Source: Octopus bimaculoides (lineage: Eukaryota). From it: a stretch of DNA of 64,000 nt. This document shows, one piece after another, positions 1,296 to 43,349 of this stretch; within the stretch, counting starts at the first letter, position 1; the number at the start of each line of letters is the position of its first letter. The notes beneath the pieces were generated by a model, which had not been told where the DNA came from, searched no databases, and saw only the letters and a program-made list of their open reading frames with translations. Both the position numbers and the translations under genes were made by a program. The stretch covers positions 105,305,650-105,369,649 of the forward strand of contig NC_068984.1 in NCBI RefSeq assembly GCF_001194135.2, read 5' to 3'.

Positions 1296-2063
1296 ATATA
1301 TATGAGGGGAAGTAAAAAATTATCCGCACTTTCGCCCACCATAATATATCTTTATTATTGTCACACTGCCTTCTGCGCACGCGTGCTTATAGTTGGTACT
1401 ATTGTGGTCACATGACTGAAGTTTGAGCCTGATCATGCCGTTTTTCTTTCTGGCTTTACAGTGTAAGCATGGCTGCTCCACTAGCAATGGGCGCCAAAGA
1501 AGAACAAACATGCTATACACAAGTGCAAACCATAATGGTAACGGAAAAAATATAGTGAAACATTAACTACACAAAGACACCATTATCACCCCACCAATGG
1601 CTGTGTAAAATATAGGAGGTTTTTATGCTGCACCTTGTATTACGAATATTAACACAAATACTAAATAATAGCCTAGTGGTAAAGGATTTTTCACTCGTGA
1701 CTGTGAGATAGTGGTTTCAATTCCTAGACTGGGTGGTGTGTTGTATTCTTGAGTAAAACACTTCATTTCATGTTGCTCATCAATCACTTTGACATCTGAC
1801 ACGTGGTACACCATGCACCTGTTCAGGCAATGTCAATTTGATGGTGGGAGTGAGCTAAGGTACAACACATACATTTGTTCACCATAAACAAATTATTTGT
1901 GCAGGTCATTCAGCAAAAGCTGAACACTCATATGTTGTCCAAGATGGGAGAGACCATCACTAAATAATTAAACTGTTATACAAGTGGACCATAGAATACA
2001 GTTTTATAATCATCTTGATTGGCATAGCAAAATATTTTGATTGAAAATAAGTATTGCTAGAAC

Positions 2064-2465
2064 TCTCTCTTTACTCTTTTACTTGTTTCAGTCATTTGAC
2101 TGTGGCCATGCTGGAGCACCGCCTTTAATCGAGCAAATCGACCCCAGGACTTATTCTTTGGAAGCCTAGTACTTATTCTATCAGTCTCTTTTGGCGAACC
2201 GCTAAGTTACGGGGACGTAAAGACACCAGCATATCGGTTGTCAAGCGATGTTGGGGGGACAAACACAGACACACAAACATACACACACACACATATATAC
2301 ATATATACGACAGGCTTCTTTCAGTTTCCATCTACCAAATCCACTCACAAGGCTTTGGTCAGCCCGAGGCTATAGTAGAATACACTTGCCCAAGGTGCCA
2401 CGCAGTGGGACTGAACCCGGGACCATGTGGTTGGTAAGCAAGCTACTTACCACACAGTCACTCCT
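2064..2465 (-). mobile_element. tRNA-derived SINE, same family as 12039-12515
   Basis: Reverse complement of the 12039-12515 sequence. Confidence 0.75.
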
Positions 2466-2617
2466 TTATTCTTGAATGCTTTAACCTATACTAACCTATA
2501 TTTTCTAACTCAAGTGAATTGGATAATTGGTTTTGGTAATAGTGATTCTACAACATTTACATCTGATAGTAGTTACAAAAGATACAAAAAATATCATTAA
2601 TGATAGTTTCATATTTG

Positions 2618-2625
2618 AAGGATAC
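2618..2625 (-). other. U12-type (minor spliceosome) 5' splice site of PCTP intron 3
   Basis: The donor reads GTATCCTT, matching the U12 consensus RTATCCTT at +1..+8. The 3' end of the intron is outside the window. Confidence 0.8.
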
Positions 2626-2705
2626 ATCACGGTAAGACATAGGTTTGGGGAATTTCACTCCCCAGTAGATGAGGTTTTTATTATCTATTGTTTTTTCATA
2701 CAGCT
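2626..2705 (-). CDS. PCTP: PCTP coding exon 3 (the gene continues beyond the window start)
   Basis: tttacAG acceptor, phase 1, (E)LYEKTIDNKNLIYWGVKFPKPMSYRD. Matches PCTP ELYE......YW.VK.P.PMS.RD. In frame with exon 2. Confidence 0.95.
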
Positions 2706-3729
2706 CTGTAAATGACATAAGAAAAAGAAAAGAAAAAACAACTAATATTAACACATTTGATTGATGCAATTATTTTATTTACTTTTAATTGTTAATATCT
2801 TTTATTTTAAGACTAAAAATTAATTCTGTTCAGTGTTCATAGATTATAATGTTATAAAATTGTTAACTCTCTCAACTTTACATTATATCATATCATTTAC
2901 AATGCTCATAAACTGAAATGTTATAAAACTTTGAAATTAAAATAATAATATAGCCTTTCATTCTCAATATTTTCTGGCTTATGATAAAATACAACAGCAA
3001 GCAGCATATTCATGTTCAAATCTGTCAGAATGTATTAAGAATGAATAGGTATGTTATTGTTTGAATGCTTGTTGTCCTGTGTGCACCCCATCAATTAGTA
3101 CCTGTTTGGCAGACATCAGCAAGCATCAGCAAATAATTTCTTTGTTGATTTCTATAAACAAGAAACTCATGCTCTTGTTATATTTATGAGTCTGTCAAAG
3201 CAGCTTTGACTGAGGAGGCGCATAATAAAGTTGAAACACTGTTGTATCTCAAAGTTCTCTTACAGTGGTAAATCACGTGTATTATGGACACACATCATCA
3301 AAAGGGACTAGCTAATCTCCAATGATGAAAAATGACAGCAATCAGATATTCCTATTTGAATTTGCCAGAACATAAGAATGAACAGATGCAGTATTGTCTT
3401 GACTCTCATGCAGCCCATGAATTAAACAATCAACTTTATATCATATATTTTTTACACTTTTCATTATTATAAAACTGTGATGTTAAAACTATCAATTTTT
3501 TATTAGATTTTTTTTTTTAACATTATGAGAAACAGTGAATTAGCTAAAACAGGCGTTGATGTTCCAAGTTTCAGTGAAAGCCAACGATTTGATGGGCAAA
3601 CAACAAAATTAAACTTATTCAGAAGAAATATATTTTTATACAATTTGATTTTTTAAAAAAATGTAACTTCACATTACTTCCTTAACAATAATAACCTTAT
3701 TAATGTAATCAAGCAACTGATTCACTCAC

Positions 3730-3844
3730 CATGTACATAGTTGTCCCATGTCTTACGATATTCAAGATCCATGTACACCTGTGAGCATATTTCAGGATCT
3801 AAATCCATTTCTCCAAAGACTTTGTACTTGTATAAACCTGAACT
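3730..3844 (-). CDS. PCTP: PCTP coding exon 2
   Basis: ttttAG acceptor, then SSGLYKYKVFGEMDLDPEICSQVYMDLEYRKTWDNYVH plus 1 nt, then GTGAGT. Matches the PCTP motif GLYEYKVFG...YMD..YRK.WD.YV. Phase 0 in, phase 1 out. Confidence 0.95.
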
Positions 3845-4606
3845 CTAAAAGAAATTAGAAATACTGGTAAGAAGTTGAATACAAGAGTAGAGTCAAAAAC
3901 TTAATTGTTAAATGTAAATTTGTCTCTAAACTGATATGTATTTATTATTATAATATATATATTATTTTATGTATCTATATTATGTATTATTATTATGATT
4001 ATTACTATTATATATAAAGACGGCGAGTCTGACAGAATCACTAGCATGTCAGAAAACATATTTAGCGGCATTTCTTACAACTCCTTTCAAGGTTGATAAA
4101 TTATAGTATCAGTCAAGTACTGGGGTGGATATGATTAACTAACCCTATCCTCCTAAAATTACTGGCCTTGTGCTAAAATTTATAACCACTATTATTATTC
4201 TGCCAAAGTTGATTTATCCTTTCATCCTTTCGGGGTCAATAAAATAAGTCCCAGCTAAGCACTGGGGTCCATGTAATCAACTAGCCCCTCCACCAACATT
4301 TCAGGTTTTGTGCCTGTAGCAGAAAGAATTATCATTATTGTCATTATATATCAAATATCTCGTTACAATTATTATATATTAAGGTGGCAAGCTGGCAGAA
4401 TCAATAGAGTGTAGGAAAAAATGCTTAGTAACATTTTTCCCAACTCTTTATATTCTGAGTTCAATTATCTGCAAGGTCAACTTTGCATTTCATCCTTTCA
4501 GGGTTGATAAATCATAGTATCAGTCAAGTACTGGGGTGGATATGATTAACTAACCCTATCTTCCTTGTGCTAAAATTTGTACTGGCCTTGTGCTAAAATT
4601 TGTAAC

Positions 4607-4637
<31 letters not shown>

Positions 4638-4934
4638 GTTGTTGTTGTTGTGAAAGCACATGGGTTAATGGTTAGGGTGTTTCACTCATGATCATAAGAT
4701 TGAGGTTTTGATTCCTGGACTGGGTGATGCATTGTGTTCTTGGGCAAAACACTTCATTTCATGTTGCCACTCAACTAGTAAAAATGAGTAATCCTGTGGC
4801 AGACAAGAGTCCCATGCTGGGGAGACAAAATATATATGCCGCAGAATCTGGGAAACTGACTTTATAAGACAATGGGTCAGGAAGGACCTTTGGTCTTGCT
4901 TGTTTGATTATTATCATTAAGTATGTCAGCACAG

Positions 4935-5900
4935 TCATGTATTTCTAAGCTGATGGTCTAGTTGACTAATGTGGATGAGGCTTCTCTTGATTGTAATGGT
5001 GCAAGTGGTGTTATTGTTTTTCTCAGGTGTGGTACTGGTGCTTACTGCTGATGTTGTTGAATGGATCTTTCCTGCTGCTCTTTCTATTGATGTTTGGGAT
5101 GTTGCTGCTCTTGGCACTGATGTTGTTGTTGTTGTTATTGCTGGTGCTTTTGATATTGTCATTGGTGTTGTGTTAAAGGTGTTTGCAGTAGCAGGGTTTT
5201 TCCTTTCTTTGCATGGGATGGGAAGCATTTAAATGGCTTGTCTTCCCACAAATGTCATCTTGGCTTTCTGCTCTCGACTGCTACAAATAACTGCATTCTA
5301 TCAGGAATGTTGATCAGGTTAGGGACAGCTTTGATAATGCTCAGATCAGAGTGTGTCCACATTTCCATATCTGACCAATTTAGCTTTCCCATTATGTTGA
5401 CTTGCAGAATTCTTGTTTTGCTCACTATGTCATATAATATAGCTTCCACCAGCAAGATGTCCACTTTTGGTGGCACCTCCACTACCTTTATTTTGAGCAC
5501 CCTTTGACCAAAGTATGTGGGAATTAGGTAGGAATTAACCTTAATTCCTCACTTTTTTTGGTTAATTCTTCAGTTGAGAATCTTACCCCAACTGTGCCAA
5601 AAAGTCTTCCATGGGCAACATAAGTTTTTAAACTCCAGACAGGTCTTGGGCATTTTTCAGTCTGGGTCTGCATTGCTCGTTCCAGTTGCCTGGTCTTTAT
5701 TGAAATATATTTATATAAGATGTTTTTTCCTTAGTGTTTACCTGTATTTCCTCTAGTATGTTAAGGAAGACTATTCTCCCATTCTTTGTTTAAATGCACT
5801 TTGGTGTTGCTTAATGTTTTTTTTCTGTTAACTCAACTTTTTTCATTTTGCAATAAGCTTGTGAGAAACCATTTCCATTCTGCTTAGAAATAAAACAGCC
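4935..5900 (-). mobile_element. Degraded non-LTR ORF1-like remnant (L1/Tx1-type, decayed zinc knuckle)
   Basis: ...KIKVVEVPPKVD...IPDRMQLFVAVESRKPR*HL followed by low-complexity Q/T-rich sequence, with many stops. Confidence 0.4.
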
Positions 5901-6320
5901 ATTATTGTCATTTTATTAATGCTTCTGTTGGATTTGGTGATGGTGTTGATACTGGAGACAGTGGTGGAGGTTGTGCTTGTGTCATTTTAAAATATATCCT
6001 GCTCATCACTGCTACTTCTGATGCTGCTGCTGTCTGAGCTTTGTTTCTTGACCATAACAGCTGTTCCAACAGCTACCACTTCCCTCAATTTGGGAAGCCA
6101 TATTGATATTTTTTGTTTTAAAATATTAAATCTTCAATTTTAAATCTAAAAATTTTCCCTTAAAGGGCAAATTCTCACCAGACCAGCACATTTCACTTGC
6201 AGTGAGCTGGCTTATTTAGCAAACAGCTAAAAAAACAGAATTGGAATACCAGCTAATAAAACAACAAATTTTAAAGAAAACTTATGAACTACAAACAAGT
6301 ATCCACTCCTTCCAAACACC

Positions 6321-6354
<34 letters not shown>

Positions 6355-7830
6355 GTTTCAAATTTTGGCACAAGGCCAGCAATTTGGGGGAGGGTTAAGT
6401 TGATTCCATCAACCCCAGTAATCAACTGGTACTTATTCTATTGACCCTGAAAGGATGAAAGTCAAAATCCACCTTGGCAGAATTTGAACTCAGAACATAA
6501 AGACAGATGAAATGCCACTAAGCATTTTGCCCTGCGTACTCACAATTCTGCTAGCTCACCTTTGGCTTGAGGTCAGCAATTTCAGGGGATAGGGGTAAGT
6601 TGATTACATTGACCCCAATACTTAACTGGTACTTATTTTATTGACCCCAAAAAGAAGAAAGGCAAAGTCGACTTTGGCAGAATTTGAACATAGAACATGA
6701 AGGCAGATAAAATGCCATTAAGCATTTCACCTGGTGTGCTAACAATTCTGGCAGCTTGCCACCTTAGTAACAACAACAACAATAATACAGTGAAAATAAG
6801 AGCACCACGACAAACCACAGCACATACCAAAGGCACACAAAGCTGTGCTCAGTAGTGCAGTGAAAGCACGTGATAAAGATAAGACTGCTGAATATTATAA
6901 TAATTCTGCTTGTCATTCTGTTACTCAGCCCATCAGTAACACTTTCATGCGATTAGAGAAAAAAGGGAGAAAGAAAAGGGGGAGAGAGAAGTGCCCATGA
7001 TGTGAAGTAGAGGGAATGTAACTGTAACGCTTTCACATGATCAGTTGAAGGGAAAGTGAGGAGAAAGAAAAAGGAGAAAAAGAGTATAAGGCAAAGAGTG
7101 ACACAGAAAGAGGGAGAAAGAAAAAGAAAAGATGGAGAGAGAAAAAGAGGGAGAGAGAAGCGTCCATGATGTGAAGTAGGGGGAACATAATATTTATTAC
7201 GTGGTTAAAAAAGTTAGATGAAAGTAGTGATGATATAGAGGGGGAGAGTTAAAAATATAATTTTAGCAGAGGGGTGATGTTCTGATGATGAATTTAAAGA
7301 AAGGCAGGGAGAGAGAGGGGGGAGATAATGATGATGGTGGTGGTGGTGGTGGTGGTGGTAGAGATGGAGGTGGTGGTGATGATTGGATAGTGAAAAGTGT
7401 ATTTTTTTAAAAATTGAACTAACTTTTTTATATCACCTATCACTTAACACATGCACATAAGTGCAATCCCATAAAATATTCGTGCTTATTTACATGGCAG
7501 ATATATGCAATTTAACTAAAGGTTGTATCATATGTACAGGATATTTTTTTTGTTCATGGGGAGAATAGAAAAATAAGAGTGCATATTTATTTCATGAGTG
7601 CTGTGTATTAAGTCTATAAAATTGTGCATAAAATATATAAAGTGTATATATAAAAGGCATTATGTAATCATCGTATTCCAATTTCTTTCTCTTTTCAGTG
7701 AATAGCAGATGAGCAACTATCTTTCCATACAGACACAACATAGGCTACACTGTCAGGTTTTTTGGATAAAGTTTTCAGAAATAACCAGACAGGTTTACCA
7801 TTAATTCCATGAAATATTCATGGGTCCTGC

Positions 7831-7866
<36 letters not shown>

Positions 7867-8059
7867 TAATGCCTGGATGCNNNNNNNNNNTATATATATA
7901 CACACGCACACAATAACGATATAATTGCTTTTTATTTTTAATTCAAACTGTAGGGTTGCTATAAGAAAAGGTCATTTATCAGCAGTAGCAACAACAACAC
8001 CAACAATGGCACCAAACGTGCCGTTATGAAATAGAAGAATAAATAGAATGGTTATTTAC

Positions 8060-8314
8060 TTGTTTAGGATCGTCATAGTAAATGCCAATGGTTTTCTTAT
8101 AAGGTGCCAGTCGTACCACTTCGCAGAATAAATGGCCCGCGTCTTTGTAGGGCCCACGAGCGAATTTGTACGCAACAACAATTTCGCCGATAGGAGGTCT
8201 CCCTGTGGTAATCTGGATATTATAGAAGAGACCCGAGTAGACCAAGAGAGCGAAAATAGAAAGTAGAATCCCCAACAGTAAGCCAAATATTCCCCAAATG
8301 AGCAATGTCTCCAT
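8060..8314 (-). CDS. TEX264: TEX264 first coding exon (N-terminal transmembrane anchor plus start of the GyrI-like domain)
   Basis: METLLIWGIFGLLLGILLSIFALLVYSGLFYNIQITTGRPPIGEIVVAYKFARGPYKDAGHLFCEVVRLAPYKKTIGIYYDDPKQ, then a GTAAAT donor (phase 0). Hydrophobic N-terminus plus YSGL..., AYKF..GPY...G.LF and G.YYD.P motifs typical of TEX264. Later exons not found in the window. Confidence 0.9.
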
Positions 8315-9232
8315 TTCAACGAAAAAAAAAATCCAGTCTGGTTTAAGGCGACAAGTTAAAAGTAAATTGAGCTTCTGTTCTCTCAACTGGAGAGAATTAA
8401 CACAAGGGGGATAACTAGTGAGATATCAATGGTAAATAGGGGAGGAGAGAGAGAGATGATGTTAATGCGGAGAGACAGAGAGGAGGCGAGAGAAAGGAGA
8501 AAGAAAGAGAGAGAGAGAGAGAGGGAGAAACAGACCAGGAAGAGAGAAAAAATGTAAAAGAAGAATAGAGAATGAAAGAAATGAAGAGAGAGAGAGAAGG
8601 AGAAAACGGAAGGGGTAGGAGAGAATAAGAGAGGAAGGGAAGGGTGTGAAGCCAGAGTGGGAGTAAAGAAGATGAAGTGGGTTGAAAGTGCAAGTAACAT
8701 TGAGGGAATTTAGCATCATATGAAGTTAACTGTCGTTGAGTTTGTTTAGCCCAAGGCAAAGCTTGATCAAACAGGCTAATGATGTAAGGCGTTGAAGCCG
8801 TAAATATCCAATCTCTCTGTCATCGTATATATAAGATTTCATTAACCTTTGTGCCTTTCCTACTATTTTTAGCGGTGGTGGTCATGTCGCCAGTTTTGGG
8901 TAGTGTTTCCTACTTGTATTTTTGAGCAGGAACTGAATTAAGTTTGTTAGCTTTTGTTGTTTTTTTTTCAGTGTTAGTTATTTTATATTTAACGTGGTTT
9001 TGAATAATATATGCATCATATACATACATGTTATATACGTAATTATTATCTTAAAAAACTTAGTGACTAAGATGAAGTTACGGACTTAAAAAAAAGTTAT
9101 TTCACTTGAGTTCCCCAAATGGATGAAAGTCAGAGTCAACTTCAGAGGGATTTTGAACTCAGAACGTAAAGACGTACGAAATACCGCTAAGCATCTTGTC
9201 TGGCGTGTCAAGGATTCCACCGTCTCGCCGCC

Positions 9233-9279
<47 letters not shown>

Positions 9280-9914
9280 AATGATGATGATGATGATGAT
9301 GATTATGATGATGATGATGATTGCCCTGATGCAGTACCAGGCAGTGACTCTCATGGCTTCTGATCTTAATTGATTGGAAGTGTTATCAAGTGTTAAAATG
9401 GGCTACAGCAAATATTCTGCTTAATATCACAGATTTGCTTGTCANNNNNNNNNNATACCACAGATTTGCTTGTCAGTTGTTTGACTTTAACCAGTTGAGC
9501 ATGATCCTTAGTGGCTGATAATATGTGCATCTCTGATCACGAGCAGAAGTAGTAGGGGAGCATCATAGCCATGTGTTGAGAGAAATTCTTTGGGGTTTTA
9601 ATAATTTACTTCTGGAAATATGGATGCTTCCTTCAACATCCTTAAACAACCCTTATTCAAGGACCACTTGAGCGGGGTGGGCTACTCGACCTGAAGACAA
9701 TTCTAACTGGGCCCCACCTGCGAGGTCATGCGCTGTTTATCTTGATATGAGATCACCATGTCGCGCACATATGGTTGTGATGCATATGCCTGGTGTACCC
9801 TTATCAGATGGGTTGTCATGATGGGTGTACTGGGCTTCGTATATTTCACCCCAGTGTCCCTTTGATGGCATGCACTACTCTCTCACTCAATAATAATAAT
9901 AATTCTTTAAGAGG

Positions 9915-10330
9915 GACAAGCAACAGTGCCTAATAATTGATGTGGCAGTGCCAGGAGATCAACATCTTGTCATGAAGAGAAAAACTTCACAAATATAGAG
10001 ACCTGAAAGTTGAGATCACCAAGTTGGGGCAACTGCCAGAGTCAAATGTAAAAGTTGTTCCTGTTGTCATTGCAGCATAGAGTTTAATACCACCTAACCT
10101 AAAGAAACATCTGGACACTTTAAAAAATACACTGGAATCTTGGGTTATTGCAAGAATTGGCTTTACTTGGAACTGCACAGTTACTGCATAAAGTGCTGGC
10201 TATCTGCGGTCCTTGTTATGACTTGACAGACAGCAAAAATCCCCAGTACATACAATATCTTCAATCTACAATATCCCAATATTGGATACTGTGCAATGTC
10301 TTCAACAGTAACAACATCAACAACAGCAGC
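9915..10330 (+). mobile_element. R4/Dong-like non-LTR retrotransposon 3' fragment
   Basis: CLIIDVAVPGDQH..., KYRDLKVEI.K...KVVPVVI, LQELALLGTAQLLHKVL: a restriction-like endonuclease C-terminus. Sits in AAT/AAC repeats. Confidence 0.65.
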
Positions 10331-12038
10331 AGCAATAGCTACTATGATGACAATGATGATGTAAATATTCCATAAAACATTAAAGCTTTAAGTAATGTTT
10401 CTTATGGTTTTTGTTATTTTTTTAAAAGTAGGAATTGGATCAAAAGAAAGAATTTGCAAACAAAAGCAACAAACTAATTATGTATAATTAAGTAGATAGT
10501 CTGACTGCAATACTTTAATAATAGTGAATAAGTTTATTTTCATAAATGAAACAAAAGCACTGAAACTGAGCCAAAAGATTTTAATTAATTATAATTACAC
10601 CTGCAGGGAGAAAAGAGAAAAATGAGGACAGTTTTTGCTTTGGTTCTTTATGTTCTCAGTTCAAATCTTGTCACAGTCAACTTTGCCTTTCATTTTGCTG
10701 AAGGCTGATGAAACATATACCAGTGAAGGCCTAGGACTGACTTAACCCATTAGCATTTAAAATGGCCATGTCCAACCTAAATATTCTATTTGTTTTATGT
10801 TCAAACTGGCCAAATCTTGGCTCTCACATTTATCTACTCTACAATGTCAATTTAAAAACAAAAAATCACATGATGGAAATCTTGAAGCTGTGAGATAATG
10901 CATGATTAATTCAAAAGAATGTGAATAAATGAGCATTATGTTCAGCAAAGTAATCTGAGTACTATTAGGTTGACCAACAGTTAATTTAAGCCAATGTGCA
11001 ATGCGCTAACTTGTTACAAGGGAACTCAAATCTTCACCCACCTACATGTAGGGTTCTAAAGACAAGTGAATTGACAAATTAGCCTGAGTACATCTCATCA
11101 CTCCTATTTTTGTCTCTTTCCAGTTCCAACTAAATCATACCCACCCTCTTCTAAAATGTGAGTAAGCATATAGCTACTCTACAGTAAAAAACCTGTTCTG
11201 CTCTGGCCCCATCTCTTAATCCTTTATCTCTTAGCATAAAACTACCTCTCTTAGGGATTTATAGTCTTGCAAGCTGCATGGTAACCTTACTAGTGATGGT
11301 AGCATGAAAAAAGAATCCAGTACCCACAGTAAGGTGGTTTGCATTAGGAAAGGCATCTAGCTATAGAAATCATGGCAAAATAGACAATGGAGCACAATGC
11401 ACCAGATCCTCTCAAACTGTCCAACCAATGCCAACGTAGAGCATGGATATTAAAGTGACAATGATGATGATGATGATGATAATGAAGACCCTATATTACT
11501 GCCAACACACACACACACACACACGCACTATAATCTACCTATACATACATATACTCTTTCAAATATGCAAAGGTAAAATAAATAAGGACAGAAAAATCAT
11601 CTTAATCATTCATTTTCATGAAAGAGAGGAAAGAACACTAGAATTAGAATTCATTTTAAAATATGGTACACAGACTGAGCTTCGGCAGTAATGGACAAAA
11701 CTTTGGGCATGTTTCACTTTTATTAGATCTCATCAGTGAAACTAGGTTTAAGCCAGTCTTTTCCACCCAAGTTCCTCAAAACCTTACAACTCCTAAAGGT
11801 GTCGCAAGGTATTCTGCAAGAAACTGTCATAAACAGTCTAATTATATGTAAGTACAATTTTGAGGCAGTTTTTTTGTTTTTATGTCTATTTTTGAATTTT
11901 ACTTTGAAAAGGTAAATTTATGAAAATATCACTACCAGTGGAAAATTCATGAGAGATATGATAATTGCTTAAGGCAAATCCATTTTGAACTGGATTAATT
12001 GAATAACATACTTATTCCTCTTAATAATAACAAATGTA

Positions 12039-12515
12039 GGCGCAGGAGTGGCTGTGTGGTAAGTAGCTTGCTTACCAACCACATGGTTCTGGATTCAGTT
12101 CCACTGCGTGGCACTTTGGGCAAGTGTCTTCTACTATAGCCTTGGGCCGACCAGAGCCTTGTGAGTGGATTTGGTAGACAGAAACTGAAAGAAGCATGTC
12201 GTATATATGTATTTTTCTATATATGTGTTTTTCTCCTTGTCTCCGTATTCTTTCTGTTGAAGAGCGTNNNNNNNNNNATATATATATATATATGTATGTA
12301 TGTTTGTGTGTCTGTGTTTGTCCCCCCAACATCGCTTGACAACCAATGCTGGTGTGTTTACGTCCCCGTAACTTAGCGGTTCGGCAAAAAGAGACCGATA
12401 GAATAAGTACTAGGCTTACAAAAGAATAAGTCCTGGGGTCGATTTGCTCGACTAAAGACGGTGCTCCAGCATGACCGTAGTCAAATGACTGAAACAAGTA
12501 AAAGAGTAAAAGAGA
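12039..12515 (+). mobile_element. tRNA-derived SINE, full length
   Basis: A-box-like TGGCTGTGTGGT, B-box-like GGATTCAGTTCC, internal (TA)n/(TG)n and a GAAACAAGTAAAAGAG tail. Other copies at 2064-2465(-) and 27835-28200(+); partial copies at 415-610, 40660-40830 and 41050-41205. Confidence 0.75.
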
Positions 12516-12814
12516 GATATATAAAATCTGGGCAATGTTTCGGTATTAGTACATGATGTCAGTCATGAGTGAGTATGTGTATGAGTGTGCGTTTAACTGT
12601 TCAACTCTGTAGAAGCGGTGTAAGACAATGTCATGCTAACTCCTGATATCATAGACTTTTACCGAAAGAGGGCCAAAATCTGTACATGGACAGTAACTGT
12701 TACCTTGTCATTTAGTAAGGCTGAATAACATTATTCAGCATTACAAAATGACAAGATAAGTTTCATGGAATTCAAAGTACCACAGCAGCTCATTGTCATT
12801 GATGTACTAGTTGA

Positions 12815-12824
12815 GAGAGAGAGA

Positions 12825-12916
<92 letters not shown>
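12815..12916. repeat. (AG)n microsatellite
   Basis: Direct read. Many other (TA)n, (TG)n, (AAT)n and (GAT)n tracts occur, e.g. 631-680, 1245-1290, 41205-41250 and 62760-62820. Confidence 0.95.
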
Positions 12917-13854
12917 TTCAGTAATATCAAATCAACAAGGTCTGGGTTTCTTCCCATTGCTTATCTCCCAATCTTGAAATACATTGTTTGAATTTTATTG
13001 AAGCTTTCTTTCAATAGCAATGACACCTTTGAGGTGTAAAAATAATTGATATCACACACACATACATACAGTAAAGTCCGAGGCCACTGTCAACCTTTTC
13101 TCTGTAAAATATGTACTCTATATAAAAATTAATTTTTCAGAGAAAGCACATGAGAAGTGAAAATATTTGTTCGGCAATTTCCGTACAATTTTTTTTTATT
13201 TCTTTAATTTTTCTTTTCAGCTGAATTGTTTATTTTTATGGGTTTTTTTTGCGCCTGTGCGTGTATGTATGTATATTTGGATGTTTGTGTTTATGTGCAT
13301 GTGTGTATATTGTGTACGTGTATCTATTTCTTCAAATTTTTTCTAGGTGAATCGCTTATGTTTATGTATTTTTTGGTGTACGTATGTGTGTGTATGTATA
13401 CATATTTGTATATGTATGTATTTATGCTCATGTATGTGTATACACATGTATATTTGTGTATGCATATACTTACATACACAAATATATAGATACACACACA
13501 CATAAACACATCATACACAAAAATACAAAAATATAAGGTGAAAACAAAAAGAGGAAAAAAAAACTTTACGGAAATTGCCGAACTAATATCTATCACTGCT
13601 CATATATATACCTTCTCTGAAAGATTTCCTGATTTCCACAAAGGCAAACTTTAATATACAATATATGTCTAGCATTATCAGGTATTTATACAGTTTATAG
13701 TAACAACAAAAGCAGGAAAATACTGTGAGTGTCAAAAAAACACAGTATAAAATATTGATTAAAAAATGACGTATGAATTAGTGCAAAGTCTAATTACATT
13801 TCAGATTAGATAAAACTCTCACAAGTGGTAAACTTGATATATTATCTCTCATAA

Positions 13855-14055
13855 GGTGGCAAGCTGGCAGAATAGTTAGCACGCCGGGCAACGGCATTTC
13901 GTTCTGAGTTCAAATTACGCTGACATCGATCTTTGCCTTTCATCCATTCGGGATCGATAAAATAAGTACCAGTTGAGCACTGGAGCCGATGTAATCGACT
14001 TACCCACTCCCCCACCCCGAAATGACTGGATTTGCACCAAAATTTGAAAGCAATA
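13855..14055 (+). mobile_element. Second SINE family (GGCAAGCTGGCAGAAT...CTTTGCCTTTCATCC...AAGTACCAG)
   Basis: Multiple diverged copies at 4020-4620, 6360-6770, 9130-9240, 17410-17560 and 30620-31170. Confidence 0.65.
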
Positions 14056-15356
14056 TATTATCTATTTCAGTTTGTGAAGGATGTTTGAAGTACAAATGTT
14101 AATTTGTTTATAGCAACAAGAATCACCCATTCGAATAAACAAGGACACCGCTAGTAGTTAAATAAGGGCATTCCTACAGATTAGTACCCCACTAATTTAG
14201 TTTCTTCATAATTCCTTGAAAAATGCTTAGTTTTTAATAAAAGTTTGCAGATATGTATTTTAGATGAAGATTACAATTATATTCAGATCGTTCTTAAGCG
14301 CAAATCGCCACGACCAACAGTTTCCGTCACAAAAGCATTTATTTATTTTTTTTTCAGACTTATAAGTTTGAAACATCAAAACATCAACATAACGTAATAT
14401 ACACTCACCGAAAATATTTCTGCAAAATGTCATTTAAAAATATTCATTTTACAGAAAACTATGAGAAAACAAAATCGGAAAGTGTGAAACTGATCCGAAA
14501 CTTCCTTTTACAAAAAATTTCAATATTGTCAACATAATTGTAATCCTTACTCTGGAAAATGTATCTCTATAAAGTTTCATTTTAAAATATACATTTTTCA
14601 GAAGGTTATGAGGAAACAGATTCAGTGAAATCTCAAACTGTAGTTATACCTATTAGAAAATGTTTCTATACCTCGAAGCCCTCTAAGTATTATCACAGAT
14701 TTATATAAAGAATGTACTTGACAGAGTGAAAACAACGATTTATTATTTGAAAAGTATCACAAAAAGTAAGATTATGTATGAGGAATTAGTAAAACTTAAT
14801 GTTAGATGTAAACAAAAACAGAGGAAATGAAACTGAAATACATAAATAAAGGATTTCTATGGCAATATTCCACACAACGCAGTCAGGAAGCGCTGACTAT
14901 TAAGTGGTGTATAAATAATTATGTTAAAAGACTACTGAAGCTGTAAGAACAGTAGAGACAAATGTAAATACTTTTATAGTCATGGCAGTTAGTAATTACA
15001 TATATATAAATATATGATTTATTGCCATGTAGGTATATATATTGTCCTAAATGGATTTCCACATCTGGGTAGCATGAGGTGACCCCACCCCCACTAAATA
15101 TGTCATTTCTGACATTTTTGTGGGAAAAGTTCGTCTGCCAAAATTTGTTTCTATTTACTTCCTGGAGTGACACACGATCAGTAAATTAACTACAATAATT
15201 TCAGGTTCAGTGAGATCATAATTGCTCAACAAAGTGTGACGTCTCGCCAAAATGAATTGTTTTTTTGTTTTTTTTTTACCCAACTCATGTGAATCGTGTT
15301 TACATATCCAGTAGATTTATTTATATATTTTTGATTTCCTACATAATCATACTCAC

Positions 15357-15482
15357 AGCATTATATAATCTGTAGATTTTCATTCCGTGTGATTCAGTAA
15401 AAAATTCCCATTCTTCTAATTTCGGTTCGTCTAATTCCTCACAAGCTGCCGTAAATTCCGAATCTTCAAACAATGCCGCCAT
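15357..15482 (-). CDS. PCTP: Phosphatidylcholine transfer protein (START domain), coding exon 1
   Basis: Translates MAALFEDSEFTAACEELDEPKLEEWEFFTESHGMKIYRLYNA (42 codons), resembling the PCTP N-terminus (F..AC.EL..P...W....E..G..IYRL). Followed by a GTGAGT donor, phase 0. CpG-rich context. Not in the ORF track. Confidence 0.92.
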
Positions 15483-17559
15483 TTTATGATTAAAGATTAA
15501 TAAACACTATTTTTTTCCTGTTTTTATACCATAAAAATATCTAAAAAAGAAGATCGATATTCTGTTTAAAGGTTACAGGTGAAGAAATTAGCTGTCACGC
15601 TGTCAGTAACTTTCACTATCTCGGGTTTCGGTTCAATCCTAGCGCGGCCCCTTCACACACTTCCGCTCTCCAATGTCCGCTCCTCGTCCACTGACGACCG
15701 ATAATGATTATTCATAATAATTCTTCTTTGAAAGTATATAAAAATAAAACAATCTCCGAACCTTTTATTACATTACTCATGTTATATGGTTTCTTATTAA
15801 ATTAATATGTTGCTTAGCGTTTGTGATCAATGTGTTTACCAGACATAAACCCACTGTTCGCATAAGATAGTGTAGGAAAATAGAAAAACCATTTCAGTGA
15901 CATTTCACGTTTTATTGATCAATGAACCTGGAATTGCTATTGTATACGTAATTTTTTTTATTTTAATTATCTATCGTGTGATACTTGGGAAAGTAAATAA
16001 AACTATTTGGTATCCCATCTTCGACTTTGATTCCTTGTAACTTCCCGAAAAAAAAAAAGCATATTTTTTAAATGAAATTGTGGAGAGACGACTTTTTCGA
16101 ATGTATATGCTACAATTACGTCGATAAAATCAAGATATTTATGCAAAAACGTCATCTAAAAACGCGTACTTTAAAAAGAGTTATGAGGTGACAATGTCAA
16201 AAGAGGAAGAATGATATGAAACTTAAAATTTGTTTTCGTAATATTGTCAACATAACTGTAATCTACACCCTCGAAATCGTGTCTGTAAGATTTAAATACA
16301 AGAATTATTCATTTTACAGAAAGTTATGAATAAACAAAGTGTTGGGGTACCAAACTGTACGTATGCCATTGTTTATATTATTTCTCTTCATCATGTGATG
16401 CATTTCATTTACTGCTTTTCTTTATATCTCTTAGCTTCACACTTCTACCTTATTTATTTATCGAAGATCGCCTATTTATCTATTTTTAAAGTCTTCACTT
16501 TATCTTTTTATTAAATAATTCTTTAATAACATTTCTATGAATCCTTATTAATGTATGCCTTTGAAGGCCTTAAGCATCATCGATTTCTTTAGCGCTTTCA
16601 CATATTTAGTACATGGTGCATAAAAATGTCCCGTTTTATGTAATTATTTGAAGGTTGTTTCTTTGGAGTAATCAAAAATATATTTTTGTTTTACCTAATT
16701 GCTCACAATTTATATTAGTTTCTTTTTTAAATGTTATCCTTTATAAACAGGTTTAATTGAATGCATTTTACTAAACAGTAATACATTAATTTGAAAACCT
16801 GCTTATGATATAGATTATTTATGAATAACTAACTAGATAATTAGATTCTAAAGCATATATTCGATTGTTGAATAGGAGTGATGGACAACACTGGTTTGAT
16901 GCATTCAATCAGAGTATAAAAATATTGGGAATAAACCTGGAGTAGCATGTTTGTTTGATATTAGTGTGACAGATTTTTAAAATCTATAAATCCAATAGCC
17001 ATGTTCATATCAAGGCACAGAAATATAACCTGGAAAAAAAAAGAGAGGCCTTTCTTCTTGTCATTAATCAGTATTTACAGACCTAGCTACCTAATGACTA
17101 TTGATATCACTAATAGCGGCTGTGACGACAGATTACCGTCGTTTCAGGCTGAGGATTAAGTTGCTCGATCAACTTGAATTACTTGCTCCTGAATGTGCGT
17201 ACACAGACATGTGCACTCTTAACGTCTCAGGGAGAATCAACGTGTATCACAAGTACAACCCAGCTGACGAGCTTCTAAAATGTTTCAGTCACGAGATATG
17301 AGTCGACCTGAAGCTATGCCCAAGAAGCTATGCTGTGAGACGGAAGCTGGGACCTTGTGGTTGCAAAGTGAACTTGTTAGCCTTTTGTTTATTAACGTTA
17401 ATATGACGGTTTCTAATTTAAGCACAAGGCCAGCAATTTTGAAGAGAAGGGGTTAGTTTGATACCATCGGTTCCAGTAATTGACTGGTACCGTATTAACT
17501 CCGGGGGTGAGGCTGGGCAAAGTTAAAGTTGACCTCGGCAGGATTTGAACTCGGAACGT

Positions 17560-19072
17560 AAATAATCGGAATAAATTATTGAAATGATTTTCCTGCCACC
17601 CAAACGGAGTGGCAACGGCTAGAAGTAGGTATTGCAGCCGGATGCACGATATCAGTCATCTTATTCGTGCTAGTCATGGAGATGTTACTAAGATCAACAA
17701 ACTGTGAGAAAGCTGCTATAAAGATACCATTAAGGGCATTTATGGACGACGTCACTCTACTATCGGAAAGTAGAGAAGCAGCAGAGGGAACGTTAGCGCG
17801 GTTGGATGAACTGATAGGATGGGCAAGAATGAAATTCAAAGCCAAAAAATCTCGAAGCGTGGCTTTCGTGAAAGGAGTGCAAGAAGTGAAATTCAGGATA
17901 GGAGATGAAGACATACCAAAGGTGAAAGAACAACCAGTAAAGAGTCTCGGCAGATGGTATAGAGACTTATTAAATGATAAGAAGCAAGGGAAAGAGACAC
18001 ACAAGTTAGTAGAACAAGGATTAAAGGCAATTGACCGAACAACACTGCTGGGAAAATTCAAATGTTGGATACTGCAATTTTGACTGTACCCAAGGATAAT
18101 GTGGCCATTGCAAATGTACGAAATAGCCTTGAGTAGAGTAGAAAGGATAGAACAAAGATGCAGTGTGTTTATCAGAAAATGGCTTGGTCTGCCGAAACCA
18201 CTGAATACAACTGCACTATATGGAAAACCCGTGCTGCAACTACCAATAACATCGATCACCGAAGAATATAAAGCAGGAAAGGTGAGGACAGTAATGATCC
18301 GAGAAAACCCTCCAAAGGTATGAACAGGGAGGAAATGGAATGCGGAAGAGGCAGTAAACAGGGCGATCAGAATACTAAAACATGCCGATATAGTTGGAGC
18401 AACGCAAGAAGCAAGAGCCGGCCTAGGGACGAGCAGTTTCAGGCTATTTTGCAAGAGCAGTATAAAAGAGATGAAAGAGGCAGTGGTACACGAAGTGAGA
18501 AAGGAGGAAGAAGAAAGGCGGAATGTACATTTGGTACAATGTAGTCAACAGGGGCAGTGCCTGAGATGGGAGGAAAACGTGGTCAGTCGCAGAATCTCAT
18601 GGAAGGAACTTTGGGCTTGGGAACAAGCAAGAACAGCCTTCCTGATCAAGTCTACCTTCGACGTTCTACCCTCACTGGCGAACTTAGTCCGATGGAACAT
18701 AAAAACAACCGATGAATGTGGATACGGTGAGACACGTTCTGTCAAGCTGCAGACTAGCACTAGAAAGGTATACATGGCGCCATAATCAAGTCCTCGGCGT
18801 CATAAGCGCAGCACTCAAGGAGAAGATCGAGGGATACAATTGGGAAGAGTACCCCAAAGTGGAAAAACGCAGGAAAATATACTTCCAGAAGGAGGGAAAA
18901 GGACATAAGATCAGGCCTCCAAATAAAATATACGAGATAGACGAAAGATGGATGGGATACTGGGAGCTGGCCACGGATTTGGGAAGTCTAGCAATTTTTC
19001 CACTTATAAAAACAACAAAAAGACCAGACTTAGTCATATGGAACACAGAACGGAGAATAGGAATCTTGCTAG
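17560..19072 (+). mobile_element. HERO-like (R2/NeSL superfamily, restriction-like endonuclease) non-LTR retrotransposon, 5'-truncated and disrupted
   Basis: RT motifs GIAAGCTIS and AFMDD; GRKW.AEEAV...H.DIVG..Q..RAGLG block; HVLSSC zinc-knuckle remnant; RYTWRHNQVL; RPDLVIW endonuclease start. One stop at about 18081, frameshifts and deletions. Runs into the N gap at 19073-19765. Confidence 0.85.
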
Positions 19073-19778
19073 NNNNNNNNNNNNNNNNNNNNNNNNNNNN
19101 NNNNNNNNNNNNNNNNNNNNNNNNNNNNNNNNNNNNNNNNNNNNNNNNNNNNNNNNNNNNNNNNNNNNNNNNNNNNNNNNNNNNNNNNNNNNNNNNNNNN
19201 NNNNNNNNNNNNNNNNNNNNNNNNNNNNNNNNNNNNNNNNNNNNNNNNNNNNNNNNNNNNNNNNNNNNNNNNNNNNNNNNNNNNNNNNNNNNNNNNNNNN
19301 NNNNNNNNNNNNNNNNNNNNNNNNNNNNNNNNNNNNNNNNNNNNNNNNNNNNNNNNNNNNNNNNNNNNNNNNNNNNNNNNNNNNNNNNNNNNNNNNNNNN
19401 NNNNNNNNNNNNNNNNNNNNNNNNNNNNNNNNNNNNNNNNNNNNNNNNNNNNNNNNNNNNNNNNNNNNNNNNNNNNNNNNNNNNNNNNNNNNNNNNNNNN
19501 NNNNNNNNNNNNNNNNNNNNNNNNNNNNNNNNNNNNNNNNNNNNNNNNNNNNNNNNNNNNNNNNNNNNNNNNNNNNNNNNNNNNNNNNNNNNNNNNNNNN
19601 NNNNNNNNNNNNNNNNNNNNNNNNNNNNNNNNNNNNNNNNNNNNNNNNNNNNNNNNNNNNNNNNNNNNNNNNNNNNNNNNNNNNNNNNNNNNNNNNNNNN
19701 NNNNNNNNNNNNNNNNNNNNNNNNNNNNNNNNNNNNNNNNNNNNNNNNNNNNNNNNNNNNNNNNNGGGGGGGGGCCCG

Positions 19779-19841
19779 CCACGTCAAAACGGTAGAGGAG
19801 TAGGGGCCGAAACCGGACGTGGTTCCTCCTGATGATGTCTT
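19779..19841 (+). ncRNA. Candidate non-circularly permuted hammerhead ribozyme (probable HERO 3' region)
   Basis: Core strands CUGAUGA (19829-19835), GAAA (19809-19812) and GUA (19792-19794). Stem I GAGGAG/UUCCUC; stem III CGGU/ACCG extended by CCACGUC/GACGUGG; imperfect stem II. Confidence 0.6.
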
Positions 19842-20169
19842 GAGCTAACTGGATCCTACAAAGGAGCTGTTGTGGTAGCAGACCACGAAACATGGTTGAA
19901 ATTCCTAATATGATATTACTTAAAGCTTTCAACTAATGAAGAATTCGAGTTGTTTTGCAACAAAATATTTACAATTAGATTGCAGCAGTGATTTTAAAAC
20001 GTACTCCTGTGTACGTCCGTGTTGTTATTTTTTTTATAGTAATAGACTTTCATAAACTTTCAATAATATGCATTTACAAATAATAACTAACCGTTTTACA
20101 AAATTTAATTAGAAAATTGGACAAAACAGAGAACACAATTGAAAAAATTAAAAAGAAAAAAAACCAAAG

Positions 20170-21420
20170 CAATTCATCACCTTGCAGGCACTGGGAAACC
20201 TTTCTAATGGCTATTGATGCACACCAGCACGCTTGCAGCGTTGCTGTGGGTGATGGCAAGGCTGATGCACTGGAACAGCCAAGCACCCTCACGAGCCTCA
20301 CCAGTTGCTTCTGCAAGGCGAGTTGCCAGTGAAAACAGGAATCTTGCGGTTAGTGGTCTGACCCCCACCAAACGTCTCGAACACCACAGGATGGAAAATG
20401 TAGTTGGCCAAGAGATCGTGGTATTTCAGGATTTTGTTCCATTCGGCCACAGAAGCTGTGGATCTCACCCTGACCGCAGCATTTAGGATGTGAGAAGAAG
20501 TGAAGGAGTTGCTAACTGTGACATCCCAGACAAGGCCTTGCGACTGGATGGTTCCAAGATGGAGGGGATGTTTGCCTGGGCCAAGCTCCTCTTGAGTATC
20601 AGGTTCCACCTCAGGAGTCCAACAGGGTGACCCACTCAGACCTGCTCTGTTCGCACTAGGCATTGATGACATCACCAAGATGGGGGTTGAGCTAGACCTT
20701 AACATCTGGTATCTCAATGATGCTTGTTTGGGAGGGACCTCCAGACAGGGTTTTTGCCATTGCAAACATGATGGTTGGGGAGCTTGGTCACCAGGGTCTC
20801 CAAGTAAACAGCCCAAAATGTGCGTTCTGAATCCTCAACCACCTGGCTTCTCAACATCAACCAACTATTGACTTTTTTGCAGAGTCCTTCCCTTCCATTG
20901 TGGTCCTTCCCCCATCAGCTTGATGCTCCCTAGGAGCCCCAATCACTGACCTTGCCTTTGAGTCCATCTTCCAGTTGAGGGTGCCTGCCCTTGAGCAAAT
21001 GCTGAAAAATATTGAAGCTATCGAACCCCATCAAGGCTTTTTCAAAACTAAGAATTACCTCTCGATCCCCAAGCTTCCGTATTTACTCAGAGCCAGCTCA
21101 TCTTACTGATTCCCATCATGCCTCCAATGCTCCGACAACCTAATCTTTGAGAGACTCAAATGCTTAGTTAATGTCAGACTCTCTCCAACATCCCGCAATC
21201 AGGCTGCATTGCCCAAGCGATTTGGAGGTCTTATTCTTTGTAAGTGTTTGTCCCTCTCTCTCCTGCTTCCTTTCCTCCACCCACACCTGCTCCACCCTGG
21301 TGAGCAACATCCTCTCCTCTCCAACATGGACCAGTTCCAACAGGGAGTTGGATGAAGTTCTCCAACACTGGAAAGAATTGGGCCTGTCTGTAGGTGCTAA
21401 ATCTGGCAAATAGGGCAGGT
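20170..21420. mobile_element. CRE-clade non-LTR retrotransposon remnant with internal inversion
   Basis: Minus strand, about 20580 to 20204: endonuclease C-terminus LVWDVT...AE..K..KY..L...F.P..FET.G...LAEATGEARE..WLFQ..SLAI...NAASVL*. Plus strand, about 20600-21420: RT GVQQGDPL..ALF....WYLND and QAALPKRFGGL. Confidence 0.8.
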
Positions 21421-27350: not shown

Positions 27351-27939
27351 CAAGGGGAGAATATATATATATACTATGGAAACCAGCCCTATGAGTTTAT
27401 ATGACTCAAGAAGGATCTTTATCCTTTTTATATTTATTTCTAGCTGTTTGTCTCTCTCTCTCTCTCTCTCTCTNNNNNNNNNNNNNNNNNNNNNNNNNNN
27501 NNNNNNNNNNNNNNNNNNNNNNNNNNNNNNNNNNNNNNNNNNNNNNNNNNNNNNNNNNNNNNNNNNNNNNNNNNNNNNNNNNNNNNNNNNNNNNNNNNNN
27601 NNNNNNNNNNNNNNNNNNNNNNNNNNNNNNNNNNNNNNNNNNNNNNNNNNNNNNNNNNNNNNNNNNNNNNNNNNNNNNNNNNNNNNNNNNNNNNNNNNNN
27701 NNNNNNNNNNNNNNNNNNNNNNNNNNNNNNNNNNNNNNNNNNNNNNNNNNNNNNNNNNNNNNNNNNNNNNNNNNNNNNNNNNNNNNNNNNNNNNNNNNNN
27801 NNNNNNNNNNNNNNNNNTATATATATATATATATATATATATACATAGGCAACTTGGGCAAAAATCTTCTACTGTAGCCTCGGGCCGACCAAAGTCTTGT
27901 GAGTGGATTTGGTAGACGGAAACTGAAAGAAGCCCGTCG

Positions 27940-27971
<32 letters not shown>

Positions 27972-41200: not shown

Positions 41201-41239
<39 letters not shown>

Positions 41240-43180: not shown

Positions 43181-43349
43181 CAATGTGTGTGTGTGTGTGT
43201 GTGTGTACCCATACAAAGTCATTCATTTCCAGTCTTCCATGAAAAACATCTCTAGTTATGAGAAAAGGTTGGTAACAGGAAAGGCATACAGCTGCAGAAA
43301 ATCTTCCTCTACAGATTCTGTCAGACTTGTGGAAGCATGGAAATATGGA

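What the first reader, a model, noticed from the sequence alone, without database searches (positions are those of the whole stretch)
3730..15482. TEX264 first coding exon nested on the same strand inside PCTP intron 1, with fully compatible splice phases
SEEN: the order on the minus strand is PCTP exon 1 (15482-15357), TEX264 exon (8314-8060), PCTP exon 2 (3844-3730), PCTP exon 3. The TEX264 exon is stop-free and CpG-rich, and ends in a phase-0 GT donor. No further TEX264 exon was recognisable down to base 1. PCTP exon 2 begins in phase 0, so splicing TEX264 to PCTP exon 2 is in frame. A pyrimidine-tract AG at 8388-8387 opens in the TEX264 frame, which would also make 8386-8060 (327 nt) an in-frame cassette between PCTP exons 1 and 2. 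KNOWN: TEX264 is an ER membrane-anchored ER-phagy receptor; PCTP is a soluble START lipid-transfer protein. INFERENCE, four options: (a) interleaved genes in which TEX264 transcripts must skip PCTP exons; (b) an alternative promoter giving a membrane-anchored TEX264-START chimera, which would lack the first 42 aa of the START fold; (c) a shuffled partial duplicate of TEX264; (d) a scaffolding error. The exon lies on a 1.55-kb contig between 10-N gaps (7881-7890 and 9445-9454), although the right gap has overlapping flanks that support adjacency.
Basis: partly seen in the sequence, partly recalled or inferred. Interest (0 to 1): 0.8.

Follow-up and report, generated by a model that had tools for sequence, protein, structure and literature searches.

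The report
TEX264 first exon inside PCTP intron
The first coding exon of the ER-membrane gene TEX264 really does lie, on the same strand, inside the first intron of the lipid-transfer gene PCTP, but this looks like two separate genes sharing space in a gappy draft assembly, not an engineered fusion protein.

Summary
On the minus strand the order is PCTP exon 1 (15482-15357), TEX264 exon 1 (8314-8060), PCTP exon 2 (3844-3730), PCTP exon 3 (2705-2626). No other TEX264 exon exists anywhere in the 64 kb, by tblastn with 49 full-length TEX264 proteins and by a profile HMM on six frames.

Two of the three gaps between PCTP exons 1 and 2 show sequence evidence of continuity. One has a 21-nt flank overlap; the other sits inside a single SINE-like element. 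That places TEX264 exon 1 downstream of PCTP exon 1 whatever the third gap (7881-7890) hides.

The "compatible phases" are ancestral. The same exon boundaries occur in abalone, scallop and other invertebrates where the two genes are unlinked, so they do not suggest a designed chimera.

TEX264 exon 1 keeps every invariant family residue. Its CpG signature (o/e 0.96) matches a first exon, unlike the CpG-depleted PCTP internal exons.

Best reading: a lineage-specific same-strand host/nested or interleaved gene pair, with the remaining TEX264 exons outside the window or unassembled. An orphan 5' duplicate and a misplaced contig remain possible; a functional TEX264-START chimera is unlikely. Interest is modest.

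The parts
15357..15482 (-). PCTP (START-domain lipid-transfer protein) coding exon 1, 42 codons, ATG to phase-0 donor GCT|gtgagt
   Evidence: Translation, sequence. tblastn to human PCTP residues 5-46 and to scallop PCTP-like. The exon boundary is the same in scallop L007.
15483..16500 (-). CpG-preserved region upstream of PCTP exon 1, the presumed PCTP promoter and 5' UTR
   Evidence: CpG o/e 1.32 against a window mean of 0.45. The promoter role is an inference.
12044..12516 (.). SINE-like element containing assembly gap 12268-12277; its two halves are collinear across the gap
   Evidence: 12044-12212 aligns to 2465-2297 (92.3%) and 12281-12516 aligns to 2299-2063 (92.5%) of another copy. About 55 nt next to the gap do not align.
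9424..9475 (.). Assembly gap 9445-9454 with a duplicated 21-nt flank (20/21 identical), i.e. overlapping contig ends and probably no missing sequence
   Evidence: (family D13). The 17-mer occurs only at these two places in the window; 0.03 matches are expected by chance.
8315..8425 (-). Stretch upstream of the TEX264 ATG, open in frame for 37 codons, with a pyrimidine-tract AG at 8388-8387; presumed 5' UTR, and the hypothetical acceptor of a 327-nt cassette
   Evidence: This strand is CT-rich for about 300 nt, so it has few stop codons and any AG resembles an acceptor. Judged to be chance.
8060..8314 (-). TEX264 coding exon 1: start codon, hydrophobic membrane anchor (about residues 4-26), the first ~45 residues of the GyrI-like domain, and a phase-0 donor CAA|gtaaat
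   Evidence: All 27 columns invariant among the eight aligned first exons are kept. The donor position is the same in 7 distinct loci of other animals. CpG o/e 0.96.
7881..7890 (.). Assembly gap with no sequence evidence of continuity: a (TAA)n tract on one side and a (TA)n tract on the other
   Evidence: This is the only join between the TEX264 exon and PCTP exons 2-3 that remains unverified.
3730..3844 (-). PCTP coding exon 2: acceptor ttttag, starts in phase 0, ends in phase 1, donor gt at 3729-3728
   Evidence: The boundaries are identical in scallop L007.
2626..2705 (-). PCTP coding exon 3: starts in phase 1, ends in phase 0 at GAT|gtatcc

Best explanation
A genuine, intact first coding exon of TEX264, with its own CpG-preserved 5' region, lies 7 kb downstream of PCTP exon 1. 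It is on the same strand, inside the 11.5-kb first intron of PCTP. The two are separate transcription units. PCTP transcripts splice exon 1 to exon 2 and remove the TEX264 exon along with the intron. It is a first exon and has no conserved acceptor. TEX264 transcripts start at their own promoter and splice the conserved phase-0 donor at 8060 to TEX264 exon 2. That exon is not in the window. It lies either beyond base 1, which would make the genes interleaved with TEX264 intron 1 containing at least PCTP exons 2-3, or in sequence missing at gap 7881-7890, which would make TEX264 a complete nested gene. The phase compatibility with PCTP exon 2 is an ancestral coincidence, not an adaptation. Any TEX264-PCTP chimeric transcripts would be splicing by-products. 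Shown here: exon identities, order, strand, phases, continuity across two gaps, absence of further TEX264 exons, and absence of linkage in other lophotrochozoans. Inferred: an independent promoter, the separate transcription units, and the location of the remaining TEX264 exons.
For: Exon identities and coordinates. TEX264 exon 1 keeps all 27 invariant columns of the first-exon alignment. It ends at exactly the exon boundary used in abalone, Pecten and five other invertebrate loci (DDPxx|GT). After the donor the homology stops (VNNHSIYSSIS*), so it is a genomic exon and not a processed retrocopy. First-exon CpG signature: TEX264 e1 o/e 0.96 and PCTP e1 1.57, against PCTP e2 0.28, e3 0.38 and introns 0.14-0.21. 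Continuity: 21-nt overlap at gap 9445-9454, and gap 12268-12277 inside one collinear SINE-like copy. PCTP exons 1, 2, 3 appear in the correct order and orientation across the scaffold. This independently supports the relative placement of the contigs that carry them. Phases are ancestral: scallop PCTP has the same e1/e2/e3 boundaries with a 1.5-kb intron 1 and no TEX264. TEX264 is a compact gene of three coding exons in Haliotis and Pecten, and it has no START-domain neighbour within +-10 kb there or in Tubulanus and Lingula. Same-orientation host/nested pairs are common in mammals and favour long 5' introns (PMC11694760).
Against: TEX264 exons 2 and 3 were not found, so it is unproven that this exon belongs to a complete, expressed gene. 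There is no transcript evidence. Gap 7881-7890 is unverified. A truly interleaved arrangement is harder to reach in evolution than a single insertion of a duplicated 5' fragment. It would also expose the TEX264 donor to strong in-frame PCTP acceptors. The protein databases available here held no cephalopod TEX264 or PCTP; the best PCTP hit was a scallop protein at 61% identity. Orthologous loci therefore could not be compared. The species was not verified.
Confidence: 0.55

Rival explanations
1. Orphan partial duplicate. A DNA-level duplication copied the TEX264 promoter and exon 1, about 1-2 kb, into PCTP intron 1. The functional TEX264 gene, with its own exon 1, lies elsewhere, and this copy is a recent non-functional or exon-shuffling fragment.
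For: Only exon 1 is present. The profile HMM and 49 full-length queries find no exon 2 or 3 in the window, including 8 kb downstream. A single insertion explains the arrangement more simply than interleaving. The genes are unlinked in five other lophotrochozoan loci.
Against: The exon is fully intact with all invariant residues, a correct start codon and a conserved donor. It has CpG o/e 0.96 while sitting in an intron that is otherwise strongly CpG-depleted. An old silent copy would have decayed, so the duplicate would have to be recent. No flanking repeats or target-site duplications suggesting capture were found. Octopus-type introns are large, so 8 kb without exon 2 is not surprising.
Confidence: 0.2
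2. Scaffolding or assembly artefact. The small contigs 7891-9444 and 9455-12267 were inserted into the PCTP intron-1 gap by the scaffolder but belong elsewhere, nearby or inverted. Alternatively, sequence carrying TEX264 exons 2-3 is missing at gap 7881-7890.
For: The window is a fragmentary draft with 15 gaps in 64 kb, five of them of exactly 10 N. The flanks of gap 7881-7890 are microsatellites with no overlap, and a similar (TAA)n tract occurs at both 7822-7880 and 9225-9319. About 55 nt next to gap 12268-12277 do not align to the reference SINE copy.
Against: The 21-nt, 20/21 overlap at 9445-9454 is unique in the window. The two flanks of 12268-12277 are collinear halves of one element, equally diverged (92%) from the same reference copy. 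With those two joins, the TEX264 exon is physically linked downstream of PCTP exon 1 regardless of the third gap. The 10-N value is the shortest gap length in the window, which suggests an estimated gap of about zero or less.
Confidence: 0.17
3. Functional chimera. The TEX264 exon acts as an alternative first exon, or as a 327-nt cassette, of PCTP and gives a membrane-anchored START protein.
For: The TEX264 donor (phase 0) and the PCTP exon 2 acceptor (phase 0) are in frame. The stretch 8386-8060 is open and a multiple of three. No TEX264 exon 2 lies between the donor and PCTP exon 2.
Against: Both phases are ancestral and occur in species where the genes are unlinked. Phase 0 is also the commonest intron phase, from general knowledge. 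The product would carry only about 45 residues of the GyrI-like domain. It would also lack the START residues that align to human PCTP 5-46, so it would contain two truncated folds. None of 154 retrieved TEX264 relatives has PCTP/START similarity. The CpG profile marks the exon as a first exon, which argues against the cassette version. The open frame and the AG are expected in a CT-rich strand.
Confidence: 0.05

Closest known systems
Host/nested gene pairs (a gene inside an intron of another gene)
   Same: A promoter-bearing first exon of one protein-coding gene sits inside a long 5' intron of another. Same-orientation pairs are nearly as frequent as opposite-orientation pairs in mouse and human, and nested genes favour long 5'-proximal introns (PMC11694760).
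   Different: Only the first exon of the inner gene is seen. In the assembly as it stands, the inner gene's intron 1 would contain host exons 2-3. That makes the pair interleaved rather than fully nested, which is a rarer arrangement.
TEX264 (ER-phagy receptor and p97/SPRTN cofactor; N-terminal membrane anchor, GyrI-like domain, disordered C-terminus)
   Same: The hydrophobic N-terminal anchor, the conserved YSGLF...AYKF..GPYK...YYDDP motifs and the exon-1 boundary are identical to those of animal TEX264 genes. The domain layout is described in PMC7062751.
   Different: The rest of the GyrI-like domain and the C-terminal tail are not in the window. In Haliotis, Pecten, Tubulanus and Lingula the gene is compact (1.6-6 kb) and stands alone.
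PCTP / STARD2 (soluble START-domain phosphatidylcholine transfer protein, PDB 1LN1)
   Same: Exons 1-3 align to human PCTP residues 5-113 at E 8.6e-29 and to scallop PCTP-like at 61% identity, with identical intron positions and phases.
   Different: Intron 1 is 11.5 kb here against 1.5 kb in scallop, and it contains a foreign coding exon. Exons 4 onward are outside the window.
Membrane-anchored START proteins such as STARD3/MLN64 (from general knowledge)
   Same: The hypothetical TEX264-PCTP chimera would tether a START domain to a membrane.
   Different: STARD3 has a complete START fold, whereas the chimera here would lack the N-terminal 42 residues of the fold. There is no evidence that it is made.

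Membership tests
TEX264 | N-terminal hydrophobic membrane anchor followed by the conserved YSGLF / AYKF-x-GPYK / YYDDP block | tested here: met
   Residues 4-26, LLIWGIFGLLLGILLSIFALLVY, are hydrophobic. All 27 invariant alignment columns are kept. The profile-HMM match is E 1.4e-38. Relatives are named TEX264 in Haliotis, Pecten and Lingula.
TEX264 | Complete GyrI-like domain (Pfam PF06445) | tested here: not met
   The 85-aa exon has no Pfam hit. The exons that encode the rest of the domain are absent from the window. This reflects an incomplete gene in the window, not a divergent protein.
TEX264 | Disordered C-terminal tail with LIR and SHP motifs | not testable with these tools
   The third coding exon is not in the window, and no cephalopod sequence was reachable.
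TEX264 | Conserved phase-0 intron after the ...YYDDPxx codon | tested here: met
   CAA|gtaaat in the window. The same position is used in L001, L002-5, L006, L008 (Haliotis), L009/10 and L011 (Pecten).
PCTP / START domain | START fold (Pfam PF01852) | tested here: inconclusive
   Exons 1-2 score 19.4 bits, E 7e-4, which is below the gathering cut-off of 22 because only part of the domain is present. Exons 1-3 match solved human PCTP at E 8.6e-29.
PCTP / START domain | Closest to PCTP rather than to other START proteins, with shared intron positions | tested here: met
   1LN1 PCTP scores E 8.6e-29 against STARD10 at E 0.003. Scallop 'PCTP-like' is 61% identical. The e1/e2/e3 boundaries are identical.
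Host/nested gene pair | The entire inner gene is contained within one intron of the host | tested here: not met
   Only exon 1 of TEX264 lies in PCTP intron 1. No exon 2 or 3 lies between 8060 and 3845. The feature could still be met if sequence is missing at gap 7881-7890.
Interleaved (mutually overlapping) genes | Exons of the two genes alternate along one strand and each gene is complete | tested here: inconclusive
   The alternation PCTP e1 / TEX264 e1 / PCTP e2-e3 is shown. The downstream TEX264 exons were not found, so completeness is unknown.
Chimeric or fusion gene | Transcripts or homologous proteins that join the two parts | tested here: not met
   None of 154 TEX264 relatives has PCTP similarity. 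No paper links TEX264 and PCTP structurally. Transcript data are not available with these tools.

The most novel reading that the evidence does not exclude
In this mollusc lineage the TEX264 promoter and exon 1 have been inserted into PCTP intron 1 and serve as an alternative first exon. The product would be an ER-membrane-anchored START-domain isoform (TEX264 anchor + PCTP exons 2 onward), either alongside or in place of a canonical TEX264. This would be a natural case of exon shuffling that tethers a lipid-transfer domain to the ER.
Probability: 0.05. Interest if true: 0.6.

Novelty: new member of a known kind. Interest (0 to 1): 0.3.

Why it matters
If the arrangement is real, it is a clean example of same-strand gene nesting or interleaving that arose within one lineage. 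The genes are unlinked in abalone, scallops, a nemertean and a brachiopod. It would be a useful warning for gene predictors, which could easily emit a false in-frame TEX264-PCTP fusion model here. It could also be used to study how a nested promoter and an exposed in-frame donor coexist with host splicing. It does not bear on any long-standing open question. Without transcript data it does not show a new protein.

Tried and rejected
(1) I searched the window for the remaining TEX264 exons. I used human TEX264, 49 full-length TEX264 proteins and a profile HMM on all six-frame fragments. Only exon 1 was found, and the next best hit had E 0.6.

(2) I looked for cephalopod TEX264 and PCTP proteins or loci in the protein collections. 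None was reachable. The closest hits were Haliotis, Pecten and Lingula TEX264 at about 50-55% identity over the exon, unnamed Logan contigs at up to 65%, and scallop PCTP at 61%. The third protein search, with a profile, was swamped by fish TEX264. The word-indexed search is lossy: Haliotis TEX264 shares an 8-mer with the query yet was missed. Absence from it is therefore weak evidence.

(3) I looked for TEX264-START fusions among the relatives and found none.

(4) I tested synteny in other lophotrochozoans and found no linkage within +-10 kb. The flank limit of 10 kb means looser linkage was not tested.

(5) I looked for transposon-capture signatures (terminal inverted repeats, target-site duplications) around the exon and found only microsatellites and SINE fragments.

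(6) I looked for PCTP exon 4 onward in the window and found nothing.

(7) Literature searches for a TEX264-PCTP or TEX264-octopus link returned nothing relevant.

(8) A processed retrocopy was rejected, because homology ends exactly at the conserved donor.

(9) A cassette-exon reading was judged unlikely because of the first-exon CpG signature, and because the upstream open frame and AG are expected in a CT-rich strand.

(10) A tRNA scan found no genes.

Full report
**What is in the sequence**

On the minus strand the window carries four coding exons in this order.
- PCTP exon 1 is at 15482-15357. It has 42 codons starting at an ATG, and its donor is GCT|gtgagt.
- TEX264 exon 1 is at 8314-8060. 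It has 85 codons, METLL...YYDDPKQ, and its donor is CAA|gtaaat.
- PCTP exon 2 is at 3844-3730. Its acceptor is ttttag|AGT. It ends one base into a codon, and the donor gt is at 3729-3728.
- PCTP exon 3 is at 2705-2626. It runs from acag|AGCTG to GAT|gtatcc.

**Identity of the exons**

- The TEX264 exon matches human TEX264 residues 27-87 (tblastn E 1e-13).
- It matches a profile of 42 full-length TEX264 proteins at E 1.4e-38.
- Its relatives include proteins that NCBI names TEX264 homologues in Haliotis, Pecten and Lingula.
- It keeps all 27 columns that are invariant among eight aligned first exons.
- Residues 4-26 form the hydrophobic anchor known for this family (PMC7062751).
- The three PCTP exons joined match solved human PCTP (1LN1) residues 5-113 at E 8.6e-29. 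The next START protein, STARD10, scores only E 0.003.
- The same three exons are 61% identical to scallop 'phosphatidylcholine transfer protein-like'.

**The gaps (tested first, as requested)**

None of the three gaps between PCTP exons 1 and 2 lies in an exon, so no reading frame depends on a gap.
- **Gap 9445-9454.** A 21-nt flank is duplicated on both sides with 20/21 identity. Its 17-mer core occurs nowhere else in the window; 0.03 matches are expected by chance. The contig ends overlap and probably nothing is missing.
- **Gap 12268-12277.** It lies inside one SINE-like element. Positions 12044-12212 align to 2465-2297 of another copy, and 12281-12516 align to 2299-2063 of that same copy. 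Both halves are about 92% identical to it, collinear, and in the same orientation. About 55 nt beside the gap do not align, so this support is good but not absolute.
- **Gap 7881-7890.** It has a (TAA)n tract on one side and a (TA)n tract on the other. There is no evidence for or against continuity.

The window has 15 gaps, ranging from 10 to 985 N. Ten N is the shortest length, which suggests it stands for an estimated gap of about zero.

The consequence is this. The contig with PCTP exon 1 (12278-19072) is linked through 9455-12267 to the contig with the TEX264 exon (7891-9444). PCTP exon 2 must lie downstream of exon 1 and is not on those 7.4 kb. So the TEX264 exon sits between PCTP exons 1 and 2 regardless of the unverified gap. 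That holds unless both supported joins are wrong, or the PCTP exons belong to two different loci.

**What is not in the sequence**

TEX264 has three coding exons in Haliotis and Pecten and in three unnamed invertebrate loci. They cover roughly residues 1-87, 88-161 and 162 to the end. Neither exon 2 nor exon 3 is anywhere in the 64 kb. This was tested with human TEX264, with 49 full-length proteins, and with a profile HMM on every six-frame fragment, where the next best hit had E 0.6. PCTP exon 4 onward is also outside the window.

**Are the 'fully compatible splice phases' meaningful?**

They are not.
- The TEX264 exon-1 donor follows the codon after ...YYDDPx in seven distinct loci of other animals.
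- The scallop PCTP gene has exactly the same exon 1/2/3 boundaries and phases.
- In scallop, PCTP intron 1 is 1.5 kb, and the 23-kb locus contains no TEX264.
- In Haliotis and Pecten no PCTP lies within 10 kb of TEX264.
- In Tubulanus and Lingula, TEX264 is a compact stand-alone gene, and none of its annotated neighbours has a START domain.

The phases therefore predate the juxtaposition.

The upstream 'acceptor' at 8388-8387 sits in a strand that is CT-rich for about 300 nt. An open frame (37 codons) and a pyrimidine tract before any AG are expected there.

**First exon or internal exon?**

CpG observed/expected values are as follows:

| Region | CpG o/e |
|---|---|
| TEX264 exon 1 | 0.96 |
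| PCTP exon 1 | 1.57 |
| PCTP exon 2 | 0.28 |
| PCTP exon 3 | 0.38 |
| Intervening intron | 0.14-0.21 |

Animals with gene-body methylation lose CpG in methylated bodies and keep it at unmethylated 5' ends (general knowledge). On that basis the TEX264 exon looks like a promoter-proximal first exon, not a cassette exon of PCTP. It also does not look like an old silent fragment. This is an inference.

**Explanation and rivals**

The best-supported reading (about 0.55) is a lineage-specific, same-strand host/nested or interleaved pair of independent genes. The remaining TEX264 exons would lie beyond base 1 or in unassembled sequence.

Host/nested pairs in the same orientation, preferentially in long 5' introns, are common in mammals (PMC11694760). 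The kind is therefore known, although interleaving is a rarer form.

The rivals are:
- **A recent orphan duplicate of the TEX264 5' end (0.2).** It is parsimonious and consistent with the missing exons. It requires a recent origin, because the exon is perfectly intact and CpG-rich.
- **A scaffold artefact or missing sequence (0.17).** This is weakened by the two supported joins.
- **A functional TEX264-START chimera (0.05).** It is in frame. It would join about 45 residues of a GyrI-like domain to a START fold lacking the residues that align to human PCTP 5-46. No such architecture appears among 154 TEX264 relatives.

**Limits**

No cephalopod protein or locus, no transcript data and no further sequence of this assembly could be reached with the tools. 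The species was not verified. Synteny was tested only within +-10 kb.

**Verdict**

Novelty: a new member of a known kind. Interest: modest (0.3). The main practical value is as a trap for gene prediction and as a candidate for junction-level RNA checks.

Noticed in passing
window 35817-36704 (+): A 295-aa open reading frame ends in an RNA recognition motif (Pfam RRM_1, E 8e-9). It is probably a large exon of an RNA-binding protein gene on the opposite strand.
   Followed up: partly
window 17576-20816, 23192-23593, 43337-45993: There is retroelement debris here. It includes a reverse-transcriptase fragment (RVT_1, 17667-18083 +) and a SCAN/gag-like ORF (23192-23593 -). An integrase-like ORF is broken by the large gaps 43710-44396 and 44943-45927.
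   Followed up: partly
window 2063-2465, 414-646, 12044-12516, 27848-28197, 40344-41227, 50783-50920: A SINE-like element of about 400 nt, with an internal (TA/TG)n microsatellite, recurs in the window. Two of the assembly gaps (12268-12277 and 27474-27817) sit at or next to a copy, at its microsatellite. ARAGORN finds no intact tRNA in the window.
   Followed up: partly
window 1-64000: There are 15 assembly gaps in 64 kb. Five are exactly 10 N and one is 11 N; the others are 100-985 N. Most contig ends next to gaps are microsatellites. Only gap 9445-9454 shows a suffix/prefix overlap.
   Followed up: yes
window 8420-8700 (-): An unusually long CT-rich low-complexity tract of about 300 nt lies directly upstream of the TEX264 start codon. 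A related GA-rich tract (on the + strand) lies at 7047-7320. Whether it is part of the promoter or 5' UTR is unknown.
   Followed up: no
window 2500-7500 and 10000-11250: CpG depletion is extreme (o/e 0.0-0.15) in PCTP introns and internal exons. Islands at both first exons are spared. This fits heavy germline gene-body methylation across the locus.
   Followed up: partly
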